64,000 nucleotides of DNA from Heterodontus francisci (Eukaryota): NCBI RefSeq assembly GCF_036365525.1, contig NC_090409.1, forward strand, positions 39,318,437-39,382,436, written 5' to 3'. A program made the translations under genes and the position numbers. The notes below the pieces were generated by a model. The model ran no database searches. It saw nothing but the letters and a program-made list of their open reading frames with translations, and was not told where the DNA came from. The first letter of the stretch is position 1. Each line of letters begins with the position of its first letter. Below, piece after piece: positions 77 to 45,640 of the stretch.

Positions 77-409
77 CTGTTACAGAGAGATCAACATCTT
101 GATGAAAGACAACATCTGCCCTCTTGTAAAACTGGCACACATACTTGTACTGGTCTGACTGCCTGAGGTCAGAGATCATAACTGACCAGTTGCCTTGTTC
201 CAGTTGATCTTTGAACAGGTTTGTTCTGTTTCTGAACCGTGGGTCTTGTAGTGCCAACTCATCATTTCCATTGGCAAATCTGTGTAAAACTCCACGCTTG
301 AATATCCACCAAATTACCTGGAAATCAGAGACCGGGACATTCTCTTTGTAGACACAGGGCAGCACAACATGCTCCCCAAGGAACCCAGAAACTGGGACAG
401 ACGAGTAAC
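77..409 (-). CDS. Gene C exon 3: B7/butyrophilin-like Ig V-set domain (gene continues off the left edge)
   Basis: ttttccag acceptor, gtgaga donor, 333 nt, phase 1-1, open. Hand translation GYSSVPVSGFLGEHVVLPCVYKENVPVSDFQVIWWIFKRGVLHRFANGNDELALQDPRFRNRTNLFKDQLEQGNWSVMISDLRQSDQYKYVCQFYKRADVVFHQDVDLSVT, with B-strand Cys, C-strand Trp and D-x-x-x-Y-x-C. Not in the ORF track. Confidence 0.88.
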
Positions 410-860
410 CTGGAAAAGATTGAAAGTATTTATCCACAGATATAACCTCCCTGCTGGTACATTCCATCCCAAGCTTCACATGGTTACACTGCGATGCTTG
501 ATTTACAAGAAGCACTGATCAGTAACTCACTGCTTTCATTTCTGTGGGAAGGTTAAAGGTCAGGCATTAAGGGCCTTCAACTAAAACCAGCTTGTGCTGG
601 ATATTTGTATCCACAGAGCAGCTGGACAGCACTTTGAATCGTGTGTTTCCCATTGTACACATGCTGGGAGAACACATCAGGATATTGGTCACCCTGCCCA
701 CCTCCCCCCTTTGGGAGAACAATGACAGACCAGTGAACTGGCAGTGAGATCCCCAAACAAACACTGGATTTGGGACTGAGGTTTACAGAATCACCCAGGC
801 TTCAACACTGAACCAACTAATCCGAGCTCTGCTGAACGTGAGAGCAGTCACAGCGCTTAC

Positions 861-924
861 CTGAAACAGCAGCAACAGCATTTAGCAGCAGCAGGAGGAG
901 GAGGAGTTTCTGTAAGTTGGGTCC
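861..924 (-). CDS. Gene C exon 2: signal peptide
   Basis: cttgttgcag acceptor, gtaagc donor, 64 nt, phase 0-1, GPNLQKLLLLLLLLNAVAAVS(G). Confidence 0.85.
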
Positions 925-1272
925 CTGCAACAAGAAAACACAGTTACCCCCCTTTACCACAGTTTCTTGCTGCTCATGTCCATTTCTGAACCGGACTGTG
1001 TCACTGTGTCCCCCACCCCTGGGTGTAGATTAACAGCTAGGTGTTTATTTTCAGTTTAAACACAGTTTCTCTCGCTCCATCTCCTGTCTGACATTTCTCC
1101 TTTTATAAATGAGACCCTGCCCCAGGGTCAGGAAGACAAAGCCCCGAAATAGAACAAACTCTTCCCCTTTTTAGAGGGAGACAAACAATAAAGAGGCGAA
1201 TCCTCGGGGAGAGAAAGGAAAGTTTCCCCCACATCCCCCTCCCTCTCCCCGGGTGTGAGACACTGACAATAC

Positions 1273-1293
1273 CTGCAGCGCTTTTCCATCCAT
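1273..1293 (-). CDS. Gene C exon 1, coding part (MDGKALQ)
   Basis: ATG GAT GGA AAA GCG CTG CAG then gtattg donor; homologous to exon 1 of A, B and E. Confidence 0.75.
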
Positions 1294-1407
1294 TCTCCCG
1301 AACCCTGATCATCCCCTCTCGGAGACGGGAGACAGGGAATCTGCTGCTCAACCCGGATCGGCCAACTGCGCCTGTTATACTTTGAAACACAGGGACGATA
1401 GGGGTAT

Positions 1408-2235: not shown

Positions 2236-2249
2236 TCCATGTGGAGTAT

Positions 2250-2770
2250 GCACACCATTCTGCTGTTAGGAAGGATGTTGCAGGATTTTGACCCAGCGAC
2301 AGTTCTACTCGGGATGGTGTGTGGCTTGGAGGGGAACTTGCAGGTGGTGGTGTTCCCATGCATCTGCTGCCTTTGTCCTTCTAGTTGGTAGAGGTCATGG
2401 GTTTGGAAGGTGTTGTCTAAGGAGCCTTGGTGCATTGCTGCAGTGCATCTTGTAGATGGTACACACTGCTGCCACTGTGTGTCGGTGGTGGAGAGAGTGA
2501 ATGTTTGTAGATGGGGTGTCAATCAAGCGGGCTGCTTTGTCCTGGATGGTGTCGAGCTTCTTGAGTGTTGTTGGAGCTGCACTCATCCAGGCAAGTGGAG
2601 AGTCTTCCATCACACTCCTGACTTGTGCCTTGTAGATGGTGGACAGGCTTTGGGGAGTCGGGAGGTGAGTTACTCACCGCAGGATTCCCAACCTCTGACC
2701 TGCTCTTGTAGACACAGTATTTATATGGCTACTCCAGTTCAGTTTCTGGTCAATGGTAACCCCCAGAATG
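2250..2770 (-). mobile_element. 3' fragment of a CR1/L2-group LINE (RT C-terminal region)
   Basis: ORFs 2395..2613 (SPLAWMSAAPTTLKKLDTIQDKAARLI) and 2079..2522; related 3' ends near 25.9, 47.8 and 61.4 kb. Confidence 0.7.
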
Positions 2771-3300: not shown

Positions 3301-3399
3301 TGCACCATCTGGTCTGGATGGTGAACGGTGCTGAAAAAAACAAGGAGGCGCAAACCGCAAACCGCAAACAGCAACGTTTATCAGGAAGGAGCCGCTCGC

Positions 3400-3515
3400 C
3401 ATTACTGACCCCCCCGAGTGTGAGACACTGACAGTACCTGAAACCCCTTTTCTATCGTCAAGGCCTCGATCATCCCCTCCCGGAGACAGGGGAGCTGCTG
3501 CTGCTCAGCCGGAGG
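3400..3515 (-). pseudogene. ATG-less copy of the exon-1 module
   Basis: Minus strand reads gacGATAGAAAAGGGGTTTCAG|gtactgtcagtgtctcacactcgggggggtcagtaatgg, homologous to ATGGATAGAAAAGCACAGCAG|gtattgtcagtgtctcacacccgggggg. Donor after 3438; ATG lost; no exon 2 nearby. Confidence 0.65.
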
Positions 3516-5252: not shown

Positions 5253-5595
5253 AGATGTTAAAGTCCCTTATTTTCCCTAGCCCTCATGCACACACCACAC
5301 ATCCATTCAAAAACTGGTTAACCGGGGGAGGAAAAAGGAGTTTGGTTTACAGCTGTTTCATAGGAATGAAAAGAACAATTAAAAAAAAACGTTGTCATGA
5401 TCTGGAAGGAAGATCTTTGGTTTGGCGAGGTGAACCAAAGTCGAATAGTTGGATGCCACTCGAAGTCTTTCCAGGTGAGGATGAGCCGTCGATGATGGGT
5501 AGGCTTTCAAAGAACCTCAACAAAAGAAGGCTTTATATAAGGCTTTCCATCAGGTATGCAGCATGAAGGCTCTTTGGTCTTACAGCAGCAGTAAA

Positions 5596-8345: not shown

Positions 8346-9069
8346 ATGAACATATGAATTAGGAAAAGAACTCAGTCACATGAATTCTCGAGCCTGCTCA
8401 GCCATTCAATAAGATCATGGCTGATCTGATTACTCCACATTCTCAACTATCCCCAATAACCTTTCCCCACCTTGCTTATCATGAATCTATCTACCTCTGC
8501 CTTAAAAATATTGAAAGGCCTTTTGACATCATCACATTTTGAAGAAGAGCTTTATACAAACGGGAACAGTGTTATACAACATCAACTGAGATTGGACCCT
8601 AATGAGATTTGAACTCACAACTCATGGTTTACAAGACCAGCTCTCTAACCCCTGAGTAATGGAGCCAGATGTCAGCGAGGAGGAGGCAGGAGTCGGAGAA
8701 GAACACCGGCTTGACGTCAGTGGATCCGACTGTGAATGCGCGGGACACAAACAGGAAGTCAATCCTGGAATGGACGGACCCGTCTGGTCTTCACCAGGTC
8801 TATCTACACTCTGCTCCATCTGCAGGCCAAGACATTGTGCAGCTTGGCCTCTTTGACTGTTTCCATTTGGAGTCTGGACGGGGCTGAGTAAATTGGTCCT
8901 ATATTCTGTGGAGTTCAGAAAAATGAGAGGTGATCTAATTGATTCTGAAAGGGTTTGATAGGGTAGAAGCTGAGAGATTGTTCCCGCTGGTCGGGGGATC
9001 TAGAACATGGGGACACAGTCTCAGGATAAGGGGCCAATCATTCAGGACTGAGATGAGGAGAAATTATTT

Positions 9070-11594: not shown

Positions 11595-11615
11595 ATGGAT
11601 AGAAAAGCACAGCAG
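11595..11615 (+). CDS. Gene A exon 1, coding part (MDRKAQQ)
   Basis: gcaATGG Kozak context, CAG|gtattg donor. Confidence 0.75.
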
Positions 11616-14600
11616 GTATTGTCAGTGTCTCACACCCGGGGGGTCAGTCATGGGGAGAGGGACCATGGACTGTTTCAGGGCTGCTCCCGGTCTCAATGTG
11701 TCTCAGAGCCGGGAGGGAGGGGAGTCAGTAATGTGGAGAGGGACCATGGACTGTGTCAGGGCTGCTCCCGGTCTCAATGTGTCTCAGAGCCGGGAGGGAG
11801 GGGGGTCAGTAATGGGGAGAGGGACCATGGACTGTGTCAGGGCTGCTCCCGGTCTCAATGTGTCTCAGAGCCGGGAGGGAGGAGGGTCAGTAATGGGGAG
11901 AGGGACCATGGACTGTGTCAGGGCTGCTCCCGATCTCAATGTGTCTCAGAGCCGGGAGGGAGGGGGGTCAGTAATGGGGAGAGGGACCATGGACTGTGTC
12001 AGGGCTGTTCCCGGTCTCAATGTGTCTCAGAGCCGGGAGGGAGGGAGGTCAGTAATGGGGAGAGGGACCATGGACTGTGTCAGGGCTGCTCCCGGTCTCA
12101 ATGTGTCTCAGAGCCGGGAGGGAGGGGGGTCAGTAATGGGGAGAGGGACCATGGACTGTTTCAGGGCTGCTCCCGGTCTCAATGTGTCTCAGAGCCGGGA
12201 GGGAGGGGAGTCAGTAATGTGGAGAGGGACCATGGACTGTGTCAGGGCTGCTCCCGGTCTCAATGTGTCTCAGAGCCGGGAGGGAGGGGGGTCAGTAATG
12301 GGGAGAGGGATCATGGACTGTGTCAGGGCTGCTCCCGGTCTCAATGTGTCTCAGAGCCGGGAGGGAGGAGGGTCAGTAATGGGGAGAGGGACCATGGACT
12401 GTGTCAGGGCTGCTCCCGATCTCAATGTGTCTCAGAGCCGGGAGGGAGGGGGGTCAGTAATGGGGAGAGGGACCATGGACTGTGTCAGGGCTGCTCCCGG
12501 TCTCAATGTGTCTCAGAGCCGGGAGGGAGGGGGGTCAGTAATGGGGAGAGGGACCATGGACTGTGTCAGGGCTGCTCCCGATCTCAATGTGTCTCAGAGC
12601 CGGGAGGGAGGGGGGTCAGTAATGGGGAGAGGGACCATGGACTGTGTCAGGGCTGCTCCCGGTCTCAATGTGTCTCAGAGCCGGGAGGGAGGGAGGTCAG
12701 TAATGGGGAGAGGGACCATGGACTGTGTCAGGGCTGCTCCCGGTCTCAATGTGTCTCAGAGCCGGGAGGGAGGGGGGTCAGTAATGGGGAGAGGGACCAT
12801 GGACTGTGTCAGGGCTGCTCCCGGTCTCAATGTGTCTCAGAGCCGGGAGGGAGGGAGGTCAGTAATGGGGAGTGGGACCATGGACTGTGTCAGGGCTGCT
12901 CCCGGTCTCAATGTGTCTCAGAGCCGGGAGGGAGGGGGGTCAGTAATGGGGAGAGGGACCATGGACTGTGTCAGGGCTGCTCCCGGTCTCAATGTGTCTC
13001 AGAGCCGGGAGGGAGGGGGGTCAGTAATGGGGAGAGGGACCATGGACTGTGTCAGGGCTGCTCCCGGTCTCCATGTGTCTCAGAGCCGGGAGGGAGGGGA
13101 GTCAGTAATGGGGAGAGGGACCATGGACTGTGTCAGGGCTGCTCCCGGTCTCAATGTGTCTCAGAGCCGGGAGGGAGGAGGGTCAGTAATGGGGAGAGGG
13201 ACCATGGACTGTGTCCTGTCCCGGTTCAGAAATGGACATGAGCAGCAAGAAACTGTGGTAAAGGGGGGTAACTGTGTTTTCTTGTTGCAGGGACCCAACT
13301 TACAGAAACTCCTCCTCCTGCTGCTGCTGCTAAATGCTGTTGCTGCTGTTTCAGGTAAACGCTGTGACTGCTCTCACATTTCAGCAGAGCTCGGGGCTGC
13401 TGGTGATATGGATTATATCAGGATTGATCTTCCTGGATGGTGTTAACCTTGTGAATTTATACAGACTGCAGTTAGCTATCTCCTGGAAAGAACATTTGTC
13501 TGGGTGTCTGGGACTGAAATCAGTAATGTGTATATTACTGGGGAATCTTCTTCTTTGGCCTCCTTGTCTCGAGAGACAATGGGTAAGCGCCTAGAGGTGG
13601 TCAGTGGTGTCAGTCGCTGTGAGGCAACTATGGAGTGACCTCTCCATGGCGCATGCCTGGGCGAATGTATGGAGGTTGAGAGTTGCCCAAGCGTCAAAAC
13701 CCCCCTCTCGGCCTTTCTGGTGGGGTCCAAAGGAGTGCAGAGCACGACGTTTGGCACCGGTAGTATTCATTATATCAGGAATTCATCTTGCTTTAAGGTG
13801 CTGTGTTCACTGTGAGTGGGCCCATTGAGGGAGTGGACACAGTCGGTTCACATTACACATAATGATCATGAGACCTGAAAGGAAGGCAGTTAATGTCTTC
13901 AGATTAACCCCTGTGATGTGAACAGTGGAATCTGGACACTGAGTGTTAGTGAGAATGAATCTAGAAGAATCACTCGACACTTGGGTCTGCTCCAATGTCA
14001 AACGGTTTATTGAGTTACGCCAGCAGGGAGCAGGTCACTGGGCTGTCCAGATGCCCCTCCACTGAACAATGAAAAATCATCAATACTTATACATTTTCAA
14101 ACAGTTACTCAGCCCATCCTTTCTGGACATGGTCCAATCATAATGATTACAGATTCTCTCCATTGATTATTAAAGACCAATAGAAGTGGTTACCAGGTGT
14201 GAAAGGGGCTGCAGGACCAACCCATGGACAGATAGGGGATTACTCATGATGTTTTCCATTCCTTTCTAGTCCCCATCCTTGGTTCTCCTGTACGCACACC
14301 ACCTTATCTTAACCTTGTTACAGGCTGGTATCTTTGTCAGCATTCCACATGGACATCTGCTCTCCATTGAATAAGTCTTTGAATTTATGTTACTCAGTTC
14401 CTGTGTGGAATGTGGTCAAGTTGGCTAAACCCCATGATGCCTTGCAAACTCTTCATTGTTCACTAAAATTACGTTACGAGTTACTCAAATAACATTTAAA
14501 CAGGATGTTCTTTTCTGCAGGTGCCTCTGCGCTTGGGAATACCCGTCAACACTGAGCAACACTCGGTGACACTGGGATGGGGTCCTGAGCACTGGGATCA

Positions 14601-19941: not shown

Positions 19942-20239
19942 CTGAGTTTACACTGCACTGAGCCTGGGTCAGGGAGGGAAAATCAGCCCAGTATTGTGGT
20001 TATCCAGTGAATCCTGGTGGAAAGTCTGAGATCGGGATCAACAATCACTTCCCACTCTGTACAAATCCCTCTGACCAGCAGAGTCTTGAGATAATCACCC
20101 AATGAAAGTTTTGTCCCGTTACTCGAAAACCTGTCCGATTGATATTTCATTGTATCTCAGTATTACTGATACAGTGTCCAAACCCAGTCTCAGGAACACA
20201 CAGGACCAACTTCAGCTGTGTAACCCATTGATCACTCCC

Positions 20240-31832: not shown

Positions 31833-32007
31833 TTAGTGCTGGACAGCCCCGTTCCCCAGAAGGTTTTGTTCTCCAGCTGCTCCATTCTGATGCTCAGGTG
31901 CTGTTGTGAAACATGGGACCTTGTGACCTAAACAAGTCACCCCTGTCAAAGGGACGACATGAGATGCTTCATTTTGATTGATGCTGTGATGCTTTTGAAC
32001 ACAATTC
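31833..32007 (-). CDS. Gene B last exon: cytoplasmic tail
   Basis: tttttttctcccag acceptor; NCVQKHHSINQNEASHVVPLTGVTCLGHKVPCFTTAPEHQNGAAGEQNLLGNGAVQH*. Confidence 0.8.
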
Positions 32008-35000
32008 CTGGGAGAAAAAAAACAGCAGAGTTCAGGTTACATTAAAAGAATCCAACACTTTGTACAAGTGTGTAAAGGAGCTGTTCAGGAGCACAGACCG
32101 ATTAAATTACACTCAACATCCTGGGCACCAATGGCAGCTGGAAAATGGGTCACAGGAGCTGCACGGTGATGGAGCACAGAGTGTAGAGGAGAGGAGGCTT
32201 ATAGAGGAGGCAATGGGCAAGAGCTGGACACTCCACAGGACCTGTGCTGACCGAGGCACCAGACCAATAGAAAAATGACAGCTCACCTCAACATTGGAGA
32301 TTAAGAAGAATTGACGAGGATCTCGGTTAACACTGAGCTGAAGATGATGGGGATCAGATCAGACAGGAGGAGGCTGGGAATGTCTGTACTCTCCACACTG
32401 ATCCTGAATTATTGAGAGGAGTCACAGATGGACAGGACATTCCCTGATGTGATCAAACCCGACCCAGCAGTGACCAAACAGGCTGACGGAGGCAGAAATA
32501 TTGTGATGGGGGAAAAAGAGTCAGAGGACAGAGTTAGAGAATCTGCAATAGTTTCCCCCCCACAACTGGCAGATGGGTAAGAGATGGGCAGGGAGATGTG
32601 GATGTTGAGGGAGGCAGAGAAATGCAACATATTTTATTGTCAGTGATCAAAAGCACTGATGGTCAGGTCAAGGGATGAGAGTGGACACAGGGTATATCAC
32701 AGAAGCGGAGGTAGGTGGGATTTGAGTGATGGGGAGAATATGGAGTCAGAAGCACAGCTCAGGGTCTGATAGGACTCAGAGGTTGTGAACAGTCTGGTTC
32801 AGCCTCAGACAGTGGCCAGGGAGGGGGATGGAGTCAGTGACTGGGGAACAGAGCAAGGATCAGAGGCTGGTGAAAAGTCAGAGGAGAGGGGCCAAGGGGA
32901 TTTTAGGTGTAGGCTGGTGAGTTGTTTGCTGCAGAGATTAGGCGAGTGTCTATTAACTGTGTGATAGAGGGAGCCGCACATTCCTGCTCTTCACCTTCAG
33001 TTCATTAGCTAGAGGATGACAACAAGCTGGAAGTGACTGGATAATGCAGCATTGAAACATCCCACACAGCACAAAGTGTATCAGTGTACACAACATTTCC
33101 ACAACACCAAATAGAATAAAACAAAACTAGAATTAACAATGGGAACTGCAGAACATTCTAGAACTCACCATCTTTGTCGCTTTTGGATTATGAAAACTAT
33201 AAATCCCTGAAGAAGAAGAAGAAAAAGAATTCCGACAACCAATCCAACTACTGCTCCAGTAGAGGGTCCAGGACCTAGAGACAGAATGAAGCCGTTAACA
33301 GACTGCGACACACTAAACAAAACTAACAGCAGAGACTGTCAGCACCTAGTGTTTCAGAACCATCCCCAGTACAAACACATCCCTGGTCAATTCTAGTCCT
33401 GGAGGGATGTGGGAGATTAAACACCAATAAACAGCCGCAGACACAGGAAGCCACCCCACAGCTCGACTTTCTTACACACCCACAATGTGATCAATATATG
33501 GTTTCCAATGGAGATAACCAGACCCTGACCAGCAGCAGCCTCCCTTTAATTAAACCCAACAGCCCGCTGAAATAAAGCAGGAATTTAAAATAATTTGCCG
33601 TTTGGGTAAACCACAGGATTGGATGGAACGCTGGTTTACAGTGGGATCAGTATTACTTTCCACTGACTTCAATGCTGAGGAGTCCTGGGGCCTATGGGGA
33701 ACCGGTGGGGTGTAGTGGGACTGTTACTGGACTAGTACTCCAGAGCCCAGGTGAATGCTCTGGGGACAGGGGTTTGAATCCCACCCACAGCAGATGGTGA
33801 AATTTGAATTTAATTAATAAAATCAGTAATTTAAAATAAAAAGCTAGAATAATGGTGACCATGAAAACAGTCGATTTGTTCATGAATGTCCTTCAGAGAA
33901 AGAAATCTGCTGGTCTGGCCTACACGTAACTCCAGACTCACAGCAATATGGTTAACTCTGAACTGCCCTCTGAAATGGCCGAGCAAGCCACTCAGTTCAA
34001 CAGCAATTAGGGATGGGCAATAAATGCTGGCCTGGCCAGTGACGCAGACATCCCACTAACATGAATAAAATAAAACAAAGTGACTGCTGACAATGCAACC
34101 CACTGCCAACATCAGAGTGCTCCCAGCTTCACACATGTGCAGATCAGAGTCTTGCTGTTAGTACAGTGCTGCCCATGTGCAGTCTACGTCAGCACCCGGT
34201 TTACCAGGACTTATTCATGTCTACGCTCAAACATCATTGTGTACTGCAATGTCTGCTCACCGCTCACCCCCAGCCTCGCTTCATCTCCCCTCCCCACCCC
34301 ACCCACTCACTCCACACTTCACACCTCCACCTATCTGTGGGCCATTCACTCCAGCCTCCCCACTCCCTCTGCCACCCCACGATTGCTGCCTTTCTTCCTC
34401 GCACAGAGACAGAAAAGATAAGCAGGGGAGGAGAGGGGGAGGGGAGCAGAGGGATGGCAGAGGGAATGAAGCAGCGATGCCAGGAGCAAGTGGTGAGTAG
34501 ACTGCTGCGGTAGGCAGCGATGATGGCAGGAGGGAGCGAGGTACTGATGGAGGTGGCGACGGCAGGAGGGAGCGAGGTACTGATGGAGGTGGCGATGTCA
34601 GGAGGGAGCGAGGTACTGCTGGGGGTCGGATGGAGGTCGTGATGTCAGGAGGGAGCGAGGTACTGCTGGGGGTGGGATGGACGTGGCAAAGGCAGGAGGG
34701 AGCGAGGTACTGTTGGGGGTGGGATGGAGGTGACGAAGGCAGGAGGGAGCGAGGTACTGATTGAGGTGGCGAAGGCAGGAGGGAGCGAGGTACTGATGGA
34801 GGTGGGATGGAGGTAGTGATGTCAGGAGGGAACGAGGTACTGTTGGGGGTAGGATGGAGGTAGCGAAGGCAGGAGGGAGCGAGGTACTGATGGGGGTGGG
34901 ATGGAGGTGGCGAAGGCAGGAGGGAGCGAGGTACTGATGGAGGTGGCGATGGCAGGAGGGAGCGAGGTACTGCTGGGGGTGGGATGGAGGTGGCGATGGC

Positions 35001-38000
35001 AGGAGGGAGCGAGGTACTGATGGGGGTGGGATGGAGGTGGCGAAGGCAGGAGGGAGCGAGGTACTGATGGAGGTGGCGATGGCAGGAGGGAGCGAGGTAC
35101 TGCTGGGGGTGGGATGGCGATGTCAGGAGGGAGCAAGGTATTGCTGGGGGTGGGATGGAGGTGGTGATGGCAGGAGGGAGCGAGGTACTGTTGGGGGTGG
35201 GATGGAGATGGCGATGGCAGGAGGGAGCGAGGTACTGTTGGGGGTGTGATGGAGGCAGTGATCACAGCCACTGTGGGCATTTGTGTTTCATTTGTTTTGT
35301 GATAAATTGAGCGTCGCCATCTTTATTACTGGCAGCTGCCAAAAAAGGTCACAGACAGCGACGTTTCAGTGGATCAGGCTGCATTTTCACATATGCAAGT
35401 ATTGCGACACCTAGTGGATGAATTGTCAGAAAATGCAGCAAAAGAATAACAAACTCCCTCCTGACTGTATACCACTGTGCCCCCACCTCGGGTGGGTCTG
35501 TCCTGCCAGTGGGACAAGACATACCCAGGGATGGTGATAGAGGAGTCTGGGATGTAGGGTTGATTCTGTGAGTGTGACTGTCTCACACAGCTCGCCCAAC
35601 ATGGAGACCAGTCTCCAGAGGTCAGTGAGGGGGACTTTGCAGTGTTGACTGGGCTGGGTTTGCCTTTGCTGTGTCCTTATTCGATTCCTGGGTCACAGCC
35701 AGTGGGCCAGTTTTATTCTTGTTTTTCTTTCTAGTGGTTTGATACAAACTGATTGAAGTGGCCGAGCAAATCAGAGGGCAGTTAAAAGTCAACCAGGTTA
35801 ATGTGGGACAGGAGTCACATATAGACCAGACCGGGTAAGGACGGCAGGTTTCCTTCCCTAGAGGGACATTAGTGAACCAGTTGGGTTTTCCAACAATCCA
35901 ACAGCTTCATGGTCACTTTTATTGGGACCAACTTTATATTTCCAGATTTATTTTAAACTGAATTTCAATTCTGAAAGTGCCATGGTGGGATTTGAAGCCA
36001 CGTTCTCTAGATTATTAGTCCAGGCCTCTGGATTACTAGTCGAGTAACATAACCACTGCACTGCCGTACTCATAAAATCAGAGTAAATGCAGAATACCTG
36101 AAACAGAAACCTCTCACCTGTTACAGAGAGATTGACTGAATCAGCTTGTTGCCATTGATAGTGCTCACCGATCCTCTTGTAAATCTGACACTGATACTCA
36201 TTCTGGTCTGACTGCCTGAGGTCAGAGATCATTAGTGACCAGTTGCCTTGTTCCAGTTGATCTTGGAACAGGTTTGTTCTGTTTCTGAACTGTGGGTCTT
36301 GTTGTGTTAAATCATCGTTCCCATCGATAAACTTGTGTAAAATTTCACGATTGGATATCCACCAAATTACCTGTAATTCAGAGACTGGGACATTCCCTTT
36401 GTAGATACAGGGCAGCACAACCTGCTCCCCAAGGAACCCAGAAACTGGAAAAGATTGAAAGTATTTATCCACAGATATAACCTCCCTGCTGGTACATTCC
36501 ATCCCAAGCTTCACATGGTTACACTGCGATGCTTGATTTACAAGAAGCACTGATCAGTAACTCACTGCTTTCATTTCTGTGGGAAGGTTAAAGGTCAGCA
36601 ATGCAGTATTTATAATGACAAGTCTCCAGTACAGTGTACACTATTCTTGTCATTTTTAAAATGGAAACATCTCCGTGTCACACACTGAAACAAGTAAATA
36701 TCTACATTTTTACAATTTAACGCTGGTTTTACAACTGGGTCAATATTACTTGCCGTTGACCTCAATTAGCATTGCACCAATCCCAGTTTCCCAACTGGAG
36801 GGTTCGGTTAAAATTGTACCGAATCTTTTCACAGACTCCCAGAAACACTGATGCTAGTGGGAAGCAGGAATCCTCAGAGTTCTGTATCAGAGGGACAGGA
36901 AGGTGAGTCTCAGAAACAGAAATAACAATTGCAGGTAGTTTAAGGAGCAGTTACAGGTAACGGTGTCCCACATCACTCACTCTCACAGAATCATTCATTG
37001 GTAAAATATCACAGCATTTCAAACCTTCCAATATTACTACCTGTCTATCCAGCATGATCAAATGTAAAATCTAAAAACACATGCAGTAGTTTAGAAATAG
37101 ATTTACCTGGTACAGGTGTGTTCGGTACAGGTGTACGAGCTCGCTCTAAAGAAAACATCATGTGTTTAGTATTGTGTGTGAAACAAACTGCAGAAATGTT
37201 CAAAGACTCTATCGGGCTGGAGGGAAACACATCCCGGGAGGAACGAGACTTGGGTCAAACTGATCAGGAACAGGGTCGGCAGAGTGAAAAATCCAACAGG
37301 ATTGCATTCACTTTGAGGGATAGAATGGAAGTTTTCCAGAGTTACCCCCAACAGGATCATTCCCAGCAGACTACACCCACCTGTGGAGAGAATTCCCACA
37401 GGATCCTGGGCGACTGGGATACACTTTCAAGGTAAGTGCACTGGGTCTTGTAAAGGCTGCCTGAGGGGTGCTATGGACCCCACCTCCTGCACCCCAACAT
37501 CTGGAGACAGATGGAGCACGTTTCTGGAGAGTGAGAGCAGCTTGATAGCACCGTTAACTCCTTCCATCACCCAGTTTAGCAGCTCTGTCCTTCAGGGCTC
37601 AGCCAGCTCGGTCAGTGGTGGGATTACAGAGTGACCCTTGGTGATGGAAAGTGAAGTCCCCACTCAGTACATTCTGTGTCCTTGTTACCCTCAGTGCTTC
37701 CTCCAAGTGGTGTTCAACATGGAGGAGAACTGATTCATCAGCTGAGGGAGGGCAGTAGGTGGGAATCAGCAGGAGGTCTCCAGGCCCATGTTTGACCTGA
37801 AGCTGTGAGATTTCATGGGGTTCAGAGTCAATGTTGAGGAGTCCTGGGGTCACTGACTCCAGACTGGATACCACTGTGTCCCCACCTCTGGTGGGTCTGT
37901 CCTGCAGGTGCGACAGAACATACCCAGGGATGGTGATAGAGGGGTCTGGGATGTCGGGTTGATTCTGTGATGATGACTCTGTCACACAGCTCTCCCAACA

Positions 38001-41000
38001 TGGACACCAGTCTCCAGATGTCAGTGAGGGGAACATGGCAGTGTCAACTGGGCTGCATTTGCCTTTGCTGTGTCCTGATTCAATATGTGTGTCACAGCCA
38101 GTGGGCCGTTCAATTTTATTCCTGTTTTCCTTTCCAGTGGTTTGATACAAACTGATTGAAGTGGCCGAGCAGGTCAGAGGGCAGTTAAAAGTCAACCAGG
38201 TTAATGTGGGACTGGAGTCATATAGACCAGACCGGGTAAGGACGGCAGGTTTCCTTCCCGAGAGGGACATTAATGAACTGAATTTAAATTCAGTTCAAAA
38301 TAAATCTGGAAATTTTAAATTCTGAAAGTGCCATGGTGGGATTTGAACTCAAGTTCTCGGGATTATTAGACCAGGCCTCTGGATTACTAGTCTAGTAACA
38401 TAACCACTGCACTACTGCACCCATAAAATCAGAGAGTAAATGCAGAATACCTGAAACAGAATCCTCTCACCTGTTACAGAGAGATGGACAACTTGATGAA
38501 AGACTGGACTCGACCTCTGCAGAATCTGACATCGATACTCATTCTGGTCTGACTGCCTGAGGTCAGAGATCATGAGTGACCAGTTGCCTTGTTCCAGTTG
38601 ATCTTTGAACAGGTTTGTTCTGTTTCTGAACTGTGGGTCTTGTTGTGTTAAATCATCGTTCCCATCGACAAAATTATGTAAAACTCCGCGCTTGAATATC
38701 CACCAAATTACCTGTAACTCAGAGACTGGGACATTCCCTTTGTAGGTACAGGGCAGCACAACCTGCTCCCCAAGGAACCCAGAAACTGAGTAACCTGGAA
38801 AAGATTGAAAGTATTTATCCACAGATATAACCTCCCTGCTGGTACATTCCATCCCAAGCTCCACATGGTTACACTGCGATGCTTGATTTACAAGAAGCAT
38901 TGATCAGTAACTCACTGCTTTCATTTCTGTGGGAAGGTTAAAGGTCAGGCATTAAGGGCCTTCAACTAAAACCAGCTTGTGCTGGATATTTGTATCCACA
39001 GAGCAGCTGGACAGCACTTTGAATCGTGTGTTTCCCATTGTACACATGCTGGGAGAACACATCAGGATCTTGGTCACCCTGCCCACCTCCCCCCTTTGGG
39101 AGAACAATGACAGACTGGGGGTGCACAATGTGAGGTGGAGCTCAGGAGCAGAAAACTGACCCTGAAATGTAAAGACAGGAACGGGTGGGGGAGGGGGTAC
39201 CCGAGGATGTGGAAAGGGCTTTGGACAGGTTGGGGGGACAATGACGGATGAGTACACTGTGTAGGGGGTGAGGCAGCACCTGATGGTCTGAAAGGGGCCG
39301 AGGCAATGTGGATCCTCACCTCTCCACCACTAACCTGTCAGACCTTGCTCCTCACCCTAATACGGCCAGACTCTGCCCCCTCCCAGGACCCAAAACACAA
39401 TCCCCAATCCTGATGACCCTACTCCCCATGCTCAGAGGCAATTCCCAGTTCTATTTGATCCAGGACTGTCCCAGACTCCTGATCCCAGTGCTCAGGACCC
39501 CATCCCAGTACCACTGGACCCCAGTCACCCATCCCAGTGTCACTGAGTGTTGCTCAGTGTCCAGATTCCACTGTTCACATCACAGGGGTTAATCTGAAGA
39601 CATTAACTGCCTTCCTTTCAGGTCTCATGATCATTATGTGTAATGTGAATCGACTGTGTCCACTCCCTCAATGGGCCCACTCACAGTGAACACAGCACCT
39701 TAAAGCAAGATGAATTCCTGATATAATGAAGACTATTCCCCAGTAATATACACATTACTGATTTCAGTCCCAGACACCCAGACAAATGTTCTTTCCAGGA
39801 GATAGCTAACTGCAGTCTGTATAAATTCACAAGGTTAGCACCATCCAGGAAGATAAATCCTGATATAATCCATGTCACCAGCAGCCCCGAACTCTGCTGA
39901 AATGTGAGAGCAGTCACAGCGTTTACCTGAAACAGCAGCAACAGCATTTAACAGCAGCAGCAGGAGGAGGAGTTTCTGTAAGTTGGGTCCCTGCAACAAG
40001 AAAACACAGTTACCCCCCTTTACCACAGTTTCTTGCTGCTCATGTCCATTACTGAGCCGGGACAGGACACAGTCCATGGTCCCTCTCCCCATTACTGACC
40101 TCCCTCCCTCCCGGATCTGAGACACATTGAGACCGGGAGCAGCCCTGACACAGTCCATGGTCCCTCTCCCCATTACTGACCCTCCCTCCCTCCCTCCCGG
40201 CTCTGAGACACATTGAGACCGGGAGCAGCCCTGACACAGTCCATGGTCCCTCTCCCCATTACTGACCCCCCTCCCTCCCGGCTCTGAGACACATTGAGAC
40301 TGGGAGCAGCCCTGACACAGTCCATGGTCCCTCTCCCCATTACTGACCCTCCCTCCCTCCCGGCTCTGAGACACATTGAGACCGGGAGCAGCCCTGACAC
40401 AGTCCATGGTCCCTCTCCCCATTACTGACCCCCCTCCCTCCCGGCTCTGAGACACATTGAGACCGGGAGCAGCCCTGACACAGTCCATGGTCCCTCTCCC
40501 CATTACTGACCCTCCCTCCCTCCCTCCCGGCTCTGAGACACATTGAGACCGGGAGCAGCCCTGACACAGTCCATGGTCCCTCTCCCCATTACTGACCCTC
40601 CTCCCTCCCGGCTCTGAGACACATTGAGACCGGGAGCAGCCCTGACACAGTCCATGGTCCCTCTCCCCATTACTGACCCTCCCTCCCTCCCTCCCGGCTC
40701 TGAGACACATTGAGACCGGGAGCAGCCCTGACACAGTCCATGGTCCCTCTCCCCATTACTGACCCTCCCTCCCTCCCTCCCGGCTCTGAGACACATTGAG
40801 ACCGGGAGCAGCCCTGACACAGTCCATGGTCCCTCTCCCCATTACTGACCCCCCTCCTTCCCGGCTCTGAGACACATTGAGACCGGGAGCAGCCCTGACA
40901 CAGTCCATGGTCCCTCTCCCCATTACTAACCCTCCCTCCCGGCTCTGAGACACATCGAGACCGGGAGCAGCCCTGACACAGTCCATGGTCCCTCTCCCCA

Positions 41001-44000
41001 TTACTGACCCCCCTCCCTCCCGGCTCTGAGACACATTGAGACCGGGAGCAGCCCTGACAGTCCATGGTCCCTCTCCCCATTACTGACCCCCCTCCCTCCC
41101 GGCTCTGAGACACATTGAGACCGGGAGCAGCCCTGACACAGTCCATGGTCCCACTCCCCATTACTGACCCCCCTCCCTCCCGGCTCTGAGACACATTGAG
41201 ACCGGGAGCAGCCCTGACACAGTCCATGGTCCCTCTCCCCATTACTGACCCCCCTCCCTCCCGGCTCTGAGACACATTGAGACCGGGAGCAGCCCTGACA
41301 CAGTCCATGGTCCCGCTCCCCATTACTGACCCCCCTCCCTCCCGGCTCTGAGACACATTGAGACCGGGAGCAGCCCTGACACAGTCCATGGTCCCTCTCC
41401 CCATTACTGACCCCCCTCCCGGCTCTGAGACACATTGAGACCGGGAGCAGCCCTGACACAGTCCATGGTCCCTCTCCCCATTACTGACCCCCCTCCCTCC
41501 CGGCTCTGAGACACATTGAGACCGGGAGCAGCCCTGACACAGTCCATGGTCCCACTCCCCATTACTGACCCCCCTCCCTCCCGGCTCTGAGACACATTGA
41601 GACCGGGAGCAGCCCTGACACAGTCCATGGTCCCTCTCCCCATTACTGACCCCCCTCCCTCCCGGCTCTGAGACACATTGAGACCGGGAGCAGCCCTGAC
41701 ACAGTCCATGGTCCCACTCCCCATTACTGACCCCCCTCCCTCCCGGCTCTGAGACACATTGAGACCGGGAGCAGCCCTGACACAGTCCATGGTCCCGCTC
41801 CCCATTACTGACCCCCCTCCCTCCCGGCTCTGAGACACATTGAGACCGGGAGCAGCCCTGACACAGTCCATGGTCCCTCTCCCCATTACTGACCCCCCTG
41901 CCTCCCGGCTCTGAGACACATTGAGACCGGGAGCAGCCCTGACACAGTCCATGGTCCCACTCCCCATTACTGACCCCCCTCCCTCCCGGCTCTGAGACAC
42001 ATTGAGACCGGGAGCAGCCCTGACACAGTCCATGGTCCCGCTCCCCATTACTGACCCCCCTCCCTCCCGGCTCTGAGACACATTGAGACCGGGAGCAGCC
42101 CTGACACAGTCCATGGTCCCGCTCCCCATTACTGACCCTCCTCCCTCCCGGCTCTGAGACACATTGAGACCAGGAGCAGCCCTGACACAGTCCATGGTCC
42201 CTCTCCCCATTACTGACCTCCCTCCCGGCTCTGAGACACATTGAGACCGGGAGCAGCCCTGACACAGTCCATGGTCCCTCTCCCCATTACTGACCCCCCT
42301 CCCTCCCGGCTCTGAGACACATTGAGACCGGGAGCAGCCCTGACACAGTCCATGGTCCCACTCCCCATTACTGACCCCCCTCCCTCCCGGCCCTGACACA
42401 GTCCATGGTGCCTCTCCCCATTACTGACCCCCCTCCCTCCCGGCTCTGAGACACATTGAGACCGGGAGCAGCCCTGACACAGTCCATGGTCCCTCTCCCC
42501 ATTACTGACCCCCCTCCCTCCCGGCTCTGAGACACATTGAGACCGGGAGCAGCCCTGACACAGTCCATGGTCCCTCTCCCCATTACTGACCCCCCTCCCT
42601 CCCGGCTCTGAGACACATTGAGACCGGGAGCAGCCCTGACACAGTCCATGGTCCCTCTCCCCATTACTGACCCTCCCTCCCGGCTCTGAGACACATTGAG
42701 ACCGGGAGCAGCCCTGACACAGTCCATGGTCCCACTCCCCATTACTGACCCCCCTCCCTCCCGGCTCTGAGACACATTGAGACCGGGAGCAGCCCTGACA
42801 CAGTCCATGGTCCCGCTCCCCATTACTGACCCCCCTCCCTCCCGGCTCTGAGACACATTGAGACCGGGAGCAGCCCTGACACAGTCCATGGTCCCTCTCC
42901 CCATTACTGACCCCCCCTCCCTCCCGGCTCTGAGACACATTGAGACCGGGAGCAGCCCTGACACAGTCCATGGTCCCACTCCCCATTACTGACCCCCCTC
43001 CCTCCCGGCTCTGAGACACATTGAGACCGGGAGCAGCCCTGACACAGTCCATGGTCCCGCTCCCCATTACTGACCCCCCTCCCTCCCGGCTCTGAGACAC
43101 ATTGAGACCGGGAGCAGCCCTGACACAGTCCATGGTCCCGCTCCCCATTACTGACCCTCCTCCCTCCCGGCTCTGAGACACATTGAGACCGGGAGCAGCC
43201 CTGACACAGTCCATGGTCCCTCTCCCCATTACTGACCTCCCTCCCGGCTCTGAGACACATTGAGACCGGGAGCAGCCCTGACACAGTCCATGGTCCCTCT
43301 CCCCATTACTGACCCCCCTCCCTCCCGGCTCTGAGACACATTGAGACCGGGAGCAGCCCTGACACAGTCCATGGTCCCACTCCCCATTACTGACCCCCCT
43401 CCCTCCCGGCCCTGACACAGTCCATGGTCCCTCTCCCCATTACTGACCCCCCTCCCTCCCGGCTCTGAGACACATTGAGACCGGGAGCAGCCCTGACACA
43501 GTCCATGGTCCCTCTCCCCATTACTGACCCCCCTCCCTCCCGGCTCTGAGACACATTGAGACCGGGAGCAGCCCTGACACAGTCCATGGTCCCTCTCCCC
43601 ATTACTAACCCTCCCTCCCGGCTCTGAGACACATTGAGACCGGGAGCAGCCCTGACACAGTCCATGGTCCCTCTCCCCATTACTGACCCTCCATCCCGGC
43701 TCTGAGACACATTGAGACCGGGAGCAGCCCTGACACAGTCCATGGTCCCTCTCCCCATTACTGACCCCCCTCCCTCCCGGCTCTGAGACACATTGAGACC
43801 GGGAGCAGCCGACACAGTCCATGGTCCCTCTCCCCATTACTGACCCCCCTCCCGGCTCTGAGACACATTGAGACCGGGAGCAGCCCTGACACAGTCCATG
43901 GTCCCACTCCCCATTACTGACCCCCCTCCCTCCCGGCCCTGACACAGTCCATGGTGCCTCTCCCCATTACTGACCCCCCTCCCTCCCGGCTCTGAGACAC

Positions 44001-45640
44001 ATTGAGACCGGGAGCAGCCGACACAGTCCATGGTCCCTCTCCCCATTACTGACCCCCCTCCCGGCTCTGAGAGACATTGAGACCGGGAGCAGCCCTGACA
44101 CAGTCCATGGTCCCACTCCCCATTACTGACCCCCCTCCCTCCCGGCCCTGACACAGTCCATGGTCCCGCTCCCCATTACTGACCCCCCTCCCTCCCGGCT
44201 CTGAGACACATTGAGACCGGGAGCAGCCCTGACACAGTCCATGGTCCCACTCCCCATTACTGACCCCCCTCCCTCCCGGCCCTGACACAGTCCATGGTCC
44301 CTCTCCCCATTACTGACCCCCCTCCCTCCCGGCTCTGAGACACATTGAGACCGGGAGCAGCCCTGACACAGTCCATGGTCCCTCTCCCCATTACTGACCC
44401 CCCTCCCTCCCGGCTCTGAGACACATTGAGACCGGGAGCAGCCCTGACACAGTCCATGGTCCCTCTCCCCATTACTAACCCTCCCTCCCGGCTCTGAGAC
44501 ACATTGAGACCGGGAGCAGCCCTGACACAGTCCATGGTCCCTCTCCCCATTACTGACCCTCCATCCCGGCTCTGAGACACATTGAGACCGGGAGCAGCCC
44601 TGACACAGTCCATGGTCCCTCTCCCCATTACTGACCCCCCTCCCTCCCGGCTCTGAGACACATTGAGACCGGGAGCAGCCGACACAGTCCATGGTCCCTC
44701 TCCCCATTACTGACCCCCCTCCCGGCTCTGAGACACATTGAGACCGGGAGCAGCCCTGACACAGTCCATGGTCCCACTCCCCATTACTGACCCCCCTCCC
44801 TCCCGGCCCTGACACAGTCCATGGTGCCTCTCCCCATTACTGACCCCCCTCCCTCCCGGCTCTGAGACACATTGAGACCGGGAGCAGCCGACACAGTCCA
44901 TGGTCCCTCTCCCCATTACTGACCCCCCTCCCGGCTCTGAGACACATTGAGACCGGGAGCAGCCCTGACACAGTCCATGGTCCCACTCCCCATTACTGAC
45001 CCCCCTCCCTCCCGGCCCTGACACAGTCCATGGTCCCGCTCCCCATTACTGACCCCCCTCCCTCCCGGCTCTGAGACACATTGAGACCGGGAGCAGCCCT
45101 GACACAGTCCATGGTCCCGCTCCCCATTACTGACCCCCCTCCCTCCCGGCTCTGAGACACATTGAGACCGGGAGCAGCCCTGACACAGTCCATGGTCCCT
45201 CTCCCCATTACTGACCCCCCTCCCTCCCGGCTCTGAGACACATTGAGACCGGGAGCAGCCCTGACACAGTCCATGGTCCCACTCCCCATTACTGACCCCC
45301 CTCCCTCCCGGCCCTGACACAGTCCATGGTCCCGCTCCCCATTACTGACCCCCCTCCCTCCCGGCTCTGAGACACATTGAGACCGGGAGCAGCCCTGACA
45401 CAGTCCATGGTCCCTCTCCCCATTACTGACCCCCCTCCCTCCCGGCTCTGAGACACATTGAGACCGGGAGCAGCCCTGACACAGTCCATGGTCCCTCTCC
45501 CCATTACTGACCCCCCTCCCTCCCGGCTCTGAGACACATTGAGACCGGGAGCAGCCCTGACACAGTCCATGGTCCCTCTCCCCATTACTGACCCCCCGGG
45601 TGTGAGACACTGACAATACCTGCAGTGCTTTTCTATCCAT
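31833..45640 (-). CDS. Gene B: two-IgV B7/butyrophilin-like membrane protein, 338 aa; complement join(45620..45640,39927..39990,38471..38794,36118..36444,33169..33274,31833..32007)
   Basis: All GT-AG, phases 0,1,1,1,2; 1017 nt with stop and no internal stops; inverted paralog of gene A. Use of both V exons in one transcript is inferred. Confidence 0.8.
33169..33274 (-). CDS. Gene B transmembrane exon
   Basis: ctctag acceptor, TG|gtgagt donor, 106 nt; GPGPSTGAVVGLVVGILFLLLLQGFIVFIIQKRQR(W). Confidence 0.88.
34518..35250. repeat. 47-bp minisatellite in the gene B V2-TM intron
   Basis: Reverse complement of the 16500-17270 unit with a different order of variants. Confidence 0.92.
36118..36444 (-). 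CDS. Gene B V2 exon (membrane-proximal IgV)
   Basis: ttttccag acceptor, gtgaga donor, 327 nt, phase 1-1; ORF 35948..36550; 7 aa differences from the gene A V domain. Confidence 0.88.
37600..38060 (-). mobile_element. LINE endonuclease fragment
   Basis: ORF 37599..38270 ITIPGYVLSHLQDRPTRGG...TYCPPS...GDF; shorter copies after the other V exons (about 16130-16300, 35460-35650). Confidence 0.7.
38471..38794 (-). CDS. Gene B V1 exon (N-terminal IgV)
   Basis: ttttccag acceptor, gtgaga donor, 324 nt, phase 1-1; ORF 38412..38900. Confidence 0.9.
39927..39990 (-). CDS. Gene B exon 2: signal peptide
   Basis: 64 nt, same peptide and splice sites as gene A exon 2. Confidence 0.87.
40068..45595. repeat. 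81-bp minisatellite in gene B intron 1 (about 5.5 kb, roughly 70 units)
   Basis: Reverse complement of the gene A unit, with longer, shorter and about 50-bp deletion variants. Confidence 0.97.
45620..45640 (-). CDS. Gene B exon 1, coding part (MDRKALQ)
   Basis: gcaATGG, CAG|gtattg donor; start of ORF 44993..45640. Confidence 0.75.

What the first reader, a model, noticed from the sequence alone, without database searches (positions are those of the whole stretch)
77..45640. Expanding cluster of IgC-less, B7-like V-domain membrane proteins in a probable shark genome
Seen: three paralogs (C partial, A, B) with split leader, V exon(s), a 6-residue stalk, TM and a tyrosine-free tail; C and A are head-to-head, A and B tail-to-tail. 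Known: classical B7 ligands (CD276, VTCN1, ICOSLG) and most butyrophilins pair V with IgC; V-only members such as MOG are exceptions. The Gly of D-x-G-x-Y-x-C is replaced in all four domains (DQNEY, DQYKY). Inference: a lineage-specific, fast-evolving immune receptor or ligand family that pipelines would label loosely as CD276-like.
Basis: partly seen in the sequence, partly recalled or inferred. Interest (0 to 1): 0.8.

Follow-up and report, generated by a model that had tools for sequence, protein, structure and literature searches.

The report
Shark V-only B7-like gene cluster
This stretch of horn shark DNA carries transcribed members of a shark-only family of small surface proteins built from one or two B7-type antibody-like V domains, whose likely binding face differs sharply between copies while the rest stays almost unchanged.

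Summary
The window is Heterodontus francisci: its exons match RefSeq models at 100%. It carries four V-set exons: C (partial gene), A, and two in B. It also has five split-leader modules, two TM exons and two tail exons. Contigs from two studies join A's V exon straight to its TM exon, and TM to tail, at GT..AG borders, so no IgC exon was overlooked. No C-set domain turned up in 61 family models.

Amendments: B has a 39-nt Pro/Thr hinge exon between V1 and V2, and two truncated 5' modules lie beyond 45640.

The family forms one clade, found only in sharks, and expands order by order. RefSeq gives it about ten unrelated names. Its closest solved V domains are VTCN1 and CD276.

Two exon patches differ by 15-27% between copies, against about 1% in the intron just upstream. 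dN/dS stays below 1. The tail is conserved across sharks.

Most likely these are diversified B7/butyrophilin-like surface ligands; that function is inferred. The scan already found this family in neighbouring windows. Four paper searches found no description of it.

The parts
1273..1293 (-). Gene C, coding part of exon 1 (MDGKALQ, donor GT)
   Evidence: pattern match; sequence
861..924 (-). Gene C, exon 2 (hydrophobic core of the leader, 64 nt)
77..409 (-). Gene C, V exon (333 nt, phase 1-1). 100% identical to RefSeq model P0037. The rest of the gene is off the window.
3438..3473 (-). Alternative first coding exon used by RefSeq models of C (P0037, P0027)
   Evidence: 12 of 12 residues identical
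5397..5474 (+). Alternative first coding exon used by the RefSeq model of A (P0009)
   Evidence: 26 of 26 residues identical
11595..11615 (+). Gene A, coding part of exon 1 (MDRKAQQ). CCAAT and TTTATAAA lie about 70-105 nt upstream.
11638..13215 (+). 81-bp minisatellite in intron 1 of A (19.5 copies, 97% matches)
13291..13354 (+). Gene A, exon 2 (leader core)
   Evidence: A contig end in run X6 carries leader letters joined to the V exon.
15288..15632 (+). Gene A, V exon (345 nt, phase 1-1)
   Evidence: deep contig cover
16491..17270 (+). 47-bp minisatellite in the V-to-TM intron of A
18507..18627 (+). Gene A, stalk plus TM exon (121 nt)
   Evidence: GT..AG joint from the V exon in runs X1 and X5
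19773..19941 (+). Gene A, tail exon with stop codon
   Evidence: GT..AG joint from the TM exon in runs X1 and X2
45620..45640 (-). Gene B, coding part of exon 1 (MDRKALQ)
40066..45597 (-). 81-bp minisatellite in intron 1 of B (about 68 copies, with higher-order periods)
39927..39990 (-). Gene B, exon 2 (leader core)
38471..38794 (-). Gene B, V1 exon (324 nt, phase 1-1). 100% identical to P0015.
37107..37145 (-). Gene B, hinge micro-exon ERARTPVPNTPVP (39 nt, phase 1-1). The only one in the window.
   Evidence: used in P0015 and P0208
36118..36444 (-). Gene B, V2 exon (327 nt). An 18-bp deletion at the acceptor leaves a CCAG acceptor and the reading phase intact.
   Evidence: a V2-type domain follows the hinge in P0208
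34546..35255 (-). 47-bp minisatellite in the V2-to-TM intron of B
33169..33274 (-). Gene B, stalk plus TM exon (106 nt)
31833..32007 (-). Gene B, tail exon with stop codon
51901..52338 (-). Module D, a truncated 5' unit: variant exon 1 (52338-52261), 2.7 repeat units (52040-52251), exon 2 (51964-51901). No V, TM or tail exon follows it before gene B.
   Evidence: RefSeq models P0015 and P0208 start here.
62310..62935 (-). Module E, a truncated 5' unit: exon 1 MDRKTQQ (62935-62915), 5.4 repeat units (62452-62892), exon 2 (62373-62310)

Best explanation
SHOWN. The window is part of a horn shark (Heterodontus francisci) cluster of a multigene family found here only in sharks. Each gene encodes a small type I membrane protein: a leader split over two exons, one or two B7-H4/B7-H3-like IgV domains, an optional Pro/Thr-rich hinge micro-exon, a six-residue stalk, one uncharged TM helix, and a tail whose C-terminal half is conserved across shark orders. 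There is no IgC domain. All ectodomain exons are phase 1-1, so V and hinge exons can be duplicated, skipped or combined without breaking the frame (V-TM in A; V-hinge-TM and V-hinge-V-TM in B). The copies arose by tandem and inverted segmental duplication. They are kept very alike outside two patches of the V exon.

INFERRED. By canonical IgV topology, the two variable patches (C-C'-C'' and F-FG-G) lie on the GFCC'C'' sheet, the face B7 and CD28 family members use to bind partners. The B, D and E strands and two N-glycosylation sequons are nearly invariant. The proteins therefore most likely act as germline-diversified cell-surface ligands of the B7/butyrophilin kind, read by receptors on other cells. 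They have no ITIM or ITAM and no charged TM residue to signal in the usual receptor way. The conserved tail, with an E-x-x-L-L stretch near its end, would serve sorting or an unknown cytoplasmic partner. Gene conversion probably homogenises the framework and flanking intron, while selection or mosaic conversion keeps the patches different.
For: Species and gene models: exons match RefSeq models P0015 and P0037 at 100% and P0009 at 98-100%.

Domain: Pfam V-set, E 1.4e-13 to 9.3e-11. Best solved relatives per domain are VTCN1 4gos at 54.9 bits, MOG 43.7, PD-L1 about 41, CD276 about 35 per domain and BTN3A1 36.5.

Transcription and splicing: GT..AG joints 15630->18505 (runs X1 and X5, two studies) and 18626->19772 (X1, X2); a leader-to-V contig end (X6); exon bins hundreds to thousands of times deeper than the neighbouring intron bins.

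No IgC: 0 of 61 family models hit a C1-set or C2-set model, while 59 of 61 hit V-set. Every long non-V segment is hinge, TM and tail, apart from one fusion model and one N-terminal extension. As a control, C2-set_3 is found in 2 of 10 non-family relatives.

Shark-only clade: (family domains at least 116 bits, others at most 59.5).

Patchy divergence: patches 15-27% against 0.9-1.3% in about 330 nt of upstream intron for the A/B1/C pairs. With variable sites defined from 47 V domains of other sharks, 28-32% against 3-8% in 5 of 6 pairs.

Tail: a search with the tail alone found 16 proteins, all shark. The motif [AT]PEH[QL][DN]G occurs in 30 of 65 models.
Against: The function is not tested, and no tissue or cell type is known because the run records are coded.

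dN/dS is 0.44-0.87 over the whole domain and 0.38-0.93 in the patches. Positive selection is therefore not shown. Synonymous divergence is also raised in the patches, which fits mosaic conversion or poor alignment across the indel-bearing FG loop as well as it fits selection.

The patch limits were chosen after seeing the variation; only partly cures this.

The strand and face assignment rests on general IgV knowledge. No structure could be predicted.

The runs are only guessed to be RNA, and all data are contigs that may mix paralogs at 95% likeness or more.

The A/B2 pair shows no patch excess.

Twelve of 54 family tails elsewhere carry a tyrosine.
Confidence: 0.6

Rival explanations
1. They are diversified innate receptors rather than ligands. 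The variable face binds pathogen or stress molecules, and the signal passes through an unknown partner chain.
For: The family is multigene, clustered and expands lineage by lineage, with variation focused on one face of the V domain. The tail is strongly conserved and could dock a partner.
Against: The TM segments of A and B have no charged residue and their tails have no tyrosine, so there is no ITIM, ITAM or adaptor-pairing residue (read). The nearest solved V domains are ligands, VTCN1, CD276 and PD-L1, not receptors.
Confidence: 0.2
2. They are adhesion or housekeeping surface molecules used as entry sites by pathogens, and the patch variation is an escape arms race.
For: The same positions vary in all shark orders sampled, while the rest is nearly invariant. 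Soluble TM-skipped isoforms are annotated (P0037, P0018) and could act as decoys.
Against: There is no evidence of any pathogen link. dN/dS is below 1. The V domain is of B7 type.
Confidence: 0.1
3. The copies are decaying duplicates under relaxed constraint. Their transcripts are noise and the gene models are pipeline artefacts.
For: Whole-domain dN/dS is 0.44-0.87. Modules D and E are truncated. The region is rich in transposons and minisatellites.
Against: All four V exons, both TM exons and both tail exons are open, with intact splice sites. Spliced contigs occur in two studies, with very deep exon cover. The framework, the glycosylation sequons and the tail are conserved across shark orders.
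Confidence: 0.06
4. They are ordinary V-plus-IgC B7 genes (orthologues of CD276 or VTCN1) whose IgC exon was overlooked.
For: RefSeq names such as 'CD276 antigen homolog'. The best solved matches are CD276 and VTCN1.
Against: Contigs join V directly to TM at GT..AG borders. None of 61 models has a C-set domain. No open frame between V and TM looks Ig-like. Identity to any non-shark protein is at most 40%.
Confidence: 0.03

Closest known systems
VTCN1 (B7-H4) and CD276 (B7-H3), classical B7 ligands
   Same: These are the best solved sequence matches of the V domain: 4gos at 54.9 bits, CD276 about 35 bits per domain. They share the motif run from the D to the F strand, including the G-N-x-S glycosylation site. 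Both are type I membrane proteins with short tails lacking signalling motifs. CD276 also has duplicated ectodomain units.
   Different: This family has no IgC domain. It forms a multigene cluster with a hypervariable face. The Gly of D-x-G-x-Y-x-C is replaced throughout (D-Q-x-x-Y-x-C is at least 90% conserved). Its tail is unique to sharks. Identity to any non-shark protein is at most 40%.
Butyrophilins, BTNL and Skint (function recalled from general knowledge)
   Same: They share a B7-superfamily V domain (BTN3A1 36.5 bits, BTN1A1 35.4). They are also clustered, lineage-specifically expanded ligand genes.
   Different: This family has no IgC and no B30.2/SPRY domain (no such Pfam hit in 61 models). 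It has a single TM helix.
MOG (single IgV membrane protein)
   Same: One IgV and no IgC. RefSeq names many horn shark members 'MOG-like'. The V domain scores 43.7 bits.
   Different: MOG scores below VTCN1. This family is multicopy, shark-only and has no one-to-one relation to MOG. It has one hydrophobic segment (MOG's second segment is recalled, not tested). Two-V members exist.
Uncharacterised multi-V B7-like proteins of ray-finned fishes (for example P0118, P0165, P0159, P0179, P0128, P0124, P0142)
   Same: These are the nearest non-shark relatives by V-domain score. Seven of the 10 scanned show V-set domains and no real C-set domain (two have a sub-threshold C1-set score with no matched stretch), so IgC-less V-V layouts are not unique to sharks.
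   Different: Only 29-40% identical. They fall outside the shark clade (SH-aLRT 100). The tail search found no shark-type tail in them.

Membership tests
B7 family (CD80/86, ICOSLG, PD-L1/2, CD276, VTCN1, HHLA2) | N-terminal IgV of B7 type | tested here: met
   Pfam V-set. The top solved matches are CD276, VTCN1, MOG and PD-L1.
B7 family (CD80/86, ICOSLG, PD-L1/2, CD276, VTCN1, HHLA2) | Membrane-proximal IgC domain after each IgV | tested here: not met
   A V-to-TM GT..AG joint is present in contigs. None of 61 family models has a C-set hit. Control: C2-set_3 is detected in P0137 and P0174.
B7 family (CD80/86, ICOSLG, PD-L1/2, CD276, VTCN1, HHLA2) | Type I membrane protein with a short tail lacking ITIM or ITAM | tested here: met
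   Leader, one hydrophobic TM and tyrosine-free tails of 55 and 57 residues in A and B.
B7 family (CD80/86, ICOSLG, PD-L1/2, CD276, VTCN1, HHLA2) | Binds a CD28-family or other lymphocyte receptor | not testable with these tools
   Needs binding assays.
One-to-one orthologue of VTCN1, CD276 or MOG | A single orthologous lineage shared with other vertebrates | tested here: not met
   Members at 58% identity or more were found only in sharks. All other hits are at most 40% identical. The family forms one clade with order-level expansions.
Butyrophilin / BTNL | IgV-IgC ectodomain, usually with a cytoplasmic B30.2 (PRY/SPRY) domain | tested here: not met
   No C-set and no SPRY hit among the 20 Pfam families matched by the 61 models.
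Paired or innate Ig receptors (NITR, CD300, TREM kind; features recalled) | ITIM or ITSM in the tail, or a charged TM residue for adaptor pairing | tested here: not met
   The TM segments of A and B have no K, R, D or E, and their tails have no Y (read). No sequence comparison with those families was run.

The most novel reading that the evidence does not exclude
Sharks carry a germline-diversified set of V-only B7-like ligands. Gene conversion keeps the framework and flanking intron uniform, while the receptor-facing patches are held apart. These ligands co-evolve with lymphocyte receptors (gamma-delta TCR or NK-like) and so fill the selecting-ligand role that butyrophilins and Skint fill in mammals. 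The phase 1-1 exon chassis (leader, hinge, TM, conserved tail) is a reusable platform. In other sharks it also displays a Cys-rich domain that matches no Pfam model or solved structure (P0209, P0210).
Probability: 0.2. Interest if true: 0.8.

Novelty: new variant of a known kind. Interest (0 to 1): 0.55.

Why it matters
Cartilaginous fishes are the oldest living lineage with antibody- and TCR-based immunity, yet little is known about the ligands that shape their lymphocytes. This is a large, transcribed, shark-only family of B7-type V domains that has dropped the IgC domain. It varies on the presumed binding face and keeps an invariant tail, which makes it a concrete candidate for such ligands. 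It is also a clean case of framework homogenisation with patch diversification outside the MHC and the antigen receptors.

In practical terms, RefSeq gives these genes about ten unrelated names (MOG-like, SCN4B-like, JAML-like and others). Those names would mislead comparative studies, so a single family name is needed.

Tried and rejected
Overlooked IgC or hinge exon in A. I listed all open frames of 30 aa or more between V and TM and searched all six frames for hinge motifs. Nothing was found in A. The only hinge exon is in B.

Pseudo-exon reading of B-V2. The 18-bp deletion at its acceptor recreates a CCAG acceptor in the same phase, so I did not call it dead.

Positive selection. Nei-Gojobori dN/dS on the four window exons gave 0.44-0.87 for the whole domain and 0.38-0.93 for the patches. 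The Fisher tests were not significant, so I make no claim of positive selection.

Relatives outside sharks. Neither the library search nor the tail-only search found any above 40% identity or with the shark tail. Batoid or chimaera members more diverged than that are not excluded, and only the best 150 of 2991 hits were seen.

Literature. Four full-text searches and passage look-ups in PMC12841164, PMC12227049 and PMC12151841 found no description of this family. I saw passages only, no supplements; those could hold lists of shark B7 or butyrophilin genes. The 2012 B7-family paper (PMC3709836) is not held, so I cannot say what it reports for sharks.

Alternative Cys-rich ectodomain of P0209, P0210 and P0061. 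It has no Pfam or PDB match and no such exon in the window.

Rfam. The only hit was one tRNA.

Full report
WHAT IS THERE. The window has no N runs. A self-comparison shows a large inverted duplication: 15134-20947 against 36598-30833, 92.6% identity over 5,890 columns. Shorter matches tie 1-730 to both 14967-15709 (91.5%) and 38393-39115 (91.7%), and 35963-36598 to 38314-38948 (90.3%). The ORF list and a tblastn with the window's own exons give four V-type exons, two TM exons, two tail exons and five copies of a leader exon. The three V-bearing ORFs scanned are Pfam V-set, with E 2.7e-11, 9.3e-11 and 1.4e-13. The fourth, in C, aligns with them throughout.

SPECIES AND GENE MODELS. A word-index search with the natural 200-aa ORF around B-V2 returned 49 proteins at E 0.001 or better, out of 72 candidates. 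All are from sharks: Heterodontus, Mustelus, Cetorhinus, two Chiloscyllium species, Hemiscyllium, Rhincodon, Stegostoma, Scyliorhinus, Carcharodon and Pristiophorus. Their source names include MOG-like, CD276-like, VTCN1-like, sodium channel beta-4-like, ICOS ligand-like, JAML-like, butyrophilin 1A1-like and CD86-like. Mapped back with tblastn, the Heterodontus francisci models P0015 and P0037 match window exons at 100%, and P0009 at 98-100%. The window is therefore horn shark, and these genes are already predicted in RefSeq.

Exon borders, checked on the sequence:
- Gene A (+): exon 1 coding part 11595-11615 (MDRKAQQ, with CCAAT and TTTATAAA upstream), exon 2 13291-13354, V 15288-15632, stalk/TM 18507-18627, tail 19773-19941.
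- Gene B (-): exon 1 45640-45620, exon 2 39990-39927, V1 38794-38471, hinge 37145-37107, V2 36444-36118, TM 33274-33169, tail 32007-31833.
- Gene C (-): exon 1 1293-1273, exon 2 924-861, V 409-77. The rest is off the window.

I summed lengths only.

(a) A 39-nt hinge micro-exon (ERARTPVPNTPVP, phase 1-1) lies between B-V1 and B-V2 and is the only one in the window. RefSeq isoforms run V1-hinge-TM (P0015) and V1-hinge-V2-TM (P0208). The direct V1-V2 join of the 338-aa model is untested.
(b) B-V2 has an 18-bp deletion at its acceptor, but this recreates a CCAG acceptor in phase.
(c) Two truncated 5' modules lie beyond 45640, on the minus strand. Each has exon 1, a short repeat array and exon 2: D at 52338-51901 and E at 62935-62310. 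No V, TM or tail exon follows them in the window. P0015 and P0208 start in D and continue into B.
(d) Intron 1 of every copy with a measurable array holds an 81-bp minisatellite: 19.5 units in A, about 68 in B, 2.7 in D and 5.4 in E. It is G-rich on the coding strand (GC skew +0.29 to +0.32 for A, -0.36 to -0.37 for B on the minus strand).
(e) V and hinge exons are all phase 1-1, so they can be duplicated or skipped in frame. Skipping the TM exon shifts the frame of the tail exon and gives the short soluble ends seen in P0037 and P0018.

TRANSCRIPTION AND THE IgC QUESTION. Seven runs from two studies hold parts of 14000-19990. Their kind is only guessed to be RNA, and all are kept as contigs. 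I laid four of the seven, two per study.
- The V exon bins reach summed contig depths of 27,676-155,287 (X1, X2) and 846-2,672 (X5, X6). The intron bins just upstream (14200-15199) stay at about 150 or less.
- A GT..AG joint runs 15630->18505, skipping 2,874 nt, in X1 and X5 (different studies). A second runs 18626->19772 in X1 and X2.
- A contig end in X6 carries leader-exon letters joined at the V acceptor.
- Exact intron-type joints mean spliced RNA is present. In gene A the V exon is joined directly to the TM exon.
- Other loose ends belong to paralog transcripts.
- Limits: contigs cannot rank expression, paralogs at 95% likeness or more may be mixed in, and a repeat at 17600-17999 is very deep in all runs.

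At family level, a Pfam scan of 61 models found V-set in 59. No C1-set, C2-set or SPRY model was among the 20 families matched at E 0.01 or better. Of the 61, 47 have one family V domain and 14 have two. Every non-V stretch of 75 aa or more is hinge plus TM plus tail, with four exceptions: a PRDM7-like read-through model (P0063), an N-terminal extension in P0061, and two long leader regions. As a control, the same library finds the butyrophilin-type C2-set_3 domain in 2 of 10 non-family relatives.

HOW FAR THE FAMILY REACHES. HMMER against 1.84 billion representatives gave 2,991 hits at E 0.001 or better. Among the 150 listed, 14 have 58-72% identity and the other 136 have at most 40%.
- The six high-identity representatives I looked up are all sharks.
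- The 14 low-identity ones looked up are 12 ray-finned fishes, a frog (HHLA2) and a turtle.
- With a profile of the four window domains, full family domains score at least 116 bits and all others at most 59.5.
- A quick ML tree of 89 V domains (114 columns, SH-aLRT only, many forks unresolved) puts all 64 shark-family domains on one side of a branch with support 100, against 25 outgroup domains from 14 proteins.
- In that tree the 15 Heterodontus and window domains form one group (support 92), Pristiophorus one (99), and lamniforms mostly one (97). Expansion has therefore gone on separately in each order.
- I left out isoform duplicates and domains covering fewer than 85 profile positions.
- The closest solved V domains are VTCN1 (54.9 bits), MOG (43.7), PD-L1 (about 41), CD276 (about 35 per domain, 74.6 for two) and BTN3A1 (36.5).
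- Seven of the 10 nearest non-shark relatives scanned are V-V proteins of ray-finned fishes with no real C-set domain: two of them have only a sub-threshold C1-set score with no matched stretch. Loss of IgC is therefore not unique to sharks.

PATTERN OF VARIATION. In 61 distinct family V domains, the B strand, the D-E region with two sequons (N-R-T, N-W-S) and D-Q-x-x-Y-x-C are at least 90% conserved. The Gly of D-x-G-x-Y-x-C is thus replaced family-wide, not only in the four window domains. Variation falls in two stretches, residues 34-57 and 86-109 of A's exon. By canonical IgV topology (general knowledge, not computed) these are C-C'-C'' and F-FG-G, the sheet that B7 and CD28 family members use for binding.

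Between the window copies A, B1 and C, these patches differ at 19-25% of nucleotides (15-27% when pairs with B2 are included). The rest of the exon differs at 2-6%. The roughly 330 nt of intron just upstream differs at 0.9-1.3%, and the downstream intron at 6.5-8.2% (Fisher p from 3e-8 to 4e-14 for the three A/B1/C pairs). Those patch limits were chosen after seeing the data. I therefore redefined variable codons from 47 V domains of other shark species only. The window copies then differ at 28-32% in those codons against 3-8% elsewhere, in 5 of 6 pairs (p from 6e-6 to 6e-12). The recent A/B2 pair shows no excess (5.3% against 2.3%, p 0.2).

dN/dS is below 1 everywhere: 0.44-0.87 for the whole domain and 0.38-0.93 in the patches. 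Synonymous divergence in the patches (0.30-0.71, leaving out A/B2) far exceeds that of the flanking intron. This fits framework and intron homogenisation by gene conversion, with old or mosaic patch sequences retained. It does not prove positive selection, and the FG loop contains a 12-nt indel that weakens the alignment there.

TAIL. A search scoring only residues 200-258 of P0009 found 16 proteins, all shark. The motif [AT]PEH[QL][DN]G occurs in 30 of 65 models and an E-[QR]-[ND]-L-L stretch in 28; the others are mostly short or soluble isoforms. The tails of A and B have no tyrosine and their TM segments no charged residue. Elsewhere, 12 of 54 family tails do have a tyrosine.

READING. Shown: the genes, their splicing (for A), the absence of IgC, the shark-only clade, and the patchy divergence. 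Inferred: these are surface ligands of the B7/butyrophilin kind with a diversified binding face and a tail used for sorting or an unknown partner. The rivals (receptor, pathogen arms race, decay, missed IgC) are weighed in their own sections.

EARLIER NOTES OF THIS SCAN. Neighbouring windows about 61 kb before and 62 kb after this one, and one overlapping its start, were noted as clusters of single-IgV B7-like genes. One follow-up reached the same main conclusions: horn shark, shark-only, many RefSeq names, V exon more variable than the introns. I reached these points from my own calls before reading that note. Together the notes suggest the cluster spans well over 180 kb, which I could not check. 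Eleven Heterodontus protein clusters on one 44-Mb scaffold agree with a large cluster.

LIMITS. No tissue information was available. I saw no paper supplements.

Noticed in passing
window 51901-52338 and 62310-62935 (minus strand): Two truncated gene heads (exon 1, short 81-bp array, exon 2) with nothing of the gene body behind them. RefSeq models of gene B start in the nearer one, so they may serve as distant alternative promoters or be relics of unequal crossing-over.
   Followed up: partly
window 11638-13215, 40066-45597, 52040-52251, 62452-62892: An 81-bp minisatellite sits in intron 1 of each copy, ranging from 2.7 to about 68 units. It is G-rich on the coding strand and lies just downstream of the promoter. 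Its repeat number may affect transcription or recombination.
   Followed up: partly
window about 14967-15287, 38795-39115, 410-730: The roughly 330 nt of intron directly upstream of the V exon is about 99% identical among C, A and B1, much more than the downstream intron (6.5-8.2% different). This suggests recent conversion or a conserved intronic element.
   Followed up: partly
proteins P0209 (Cetorhinus), P0210 (Hemiscyllium), N-terminus of P0061 (Rhincodon); not in the window: The same leader, hinge, TM and conserved tail carry a Cys-rich domain of about 95 aa instead of, or in front of, the V domain. It has no Pfam or PDB match, and no such exon is in this window.
   Followed up: partly
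window 16491-17270 and 34546-35255: A 47-bp minisatellite (15-17 units) lies in the V-to-TM intron of both A and B. It is C-rich on the coding strand, the opposite skew to the intron-1 array.
   Followed up: no
window 17600-17999: A short repeat with very high contig depth in all four runs laid and many loose ends. It is probably an expressed interspersed element.
   Followed up: no
window 8594-8666 (minus strand): One Rfam tRNA match (40.9 bits) in the transposon-rich spacer between C and A. I did not check whether it is a true gene or a tRNA-derived repeat.
   Followed up: no
   Followed up: no
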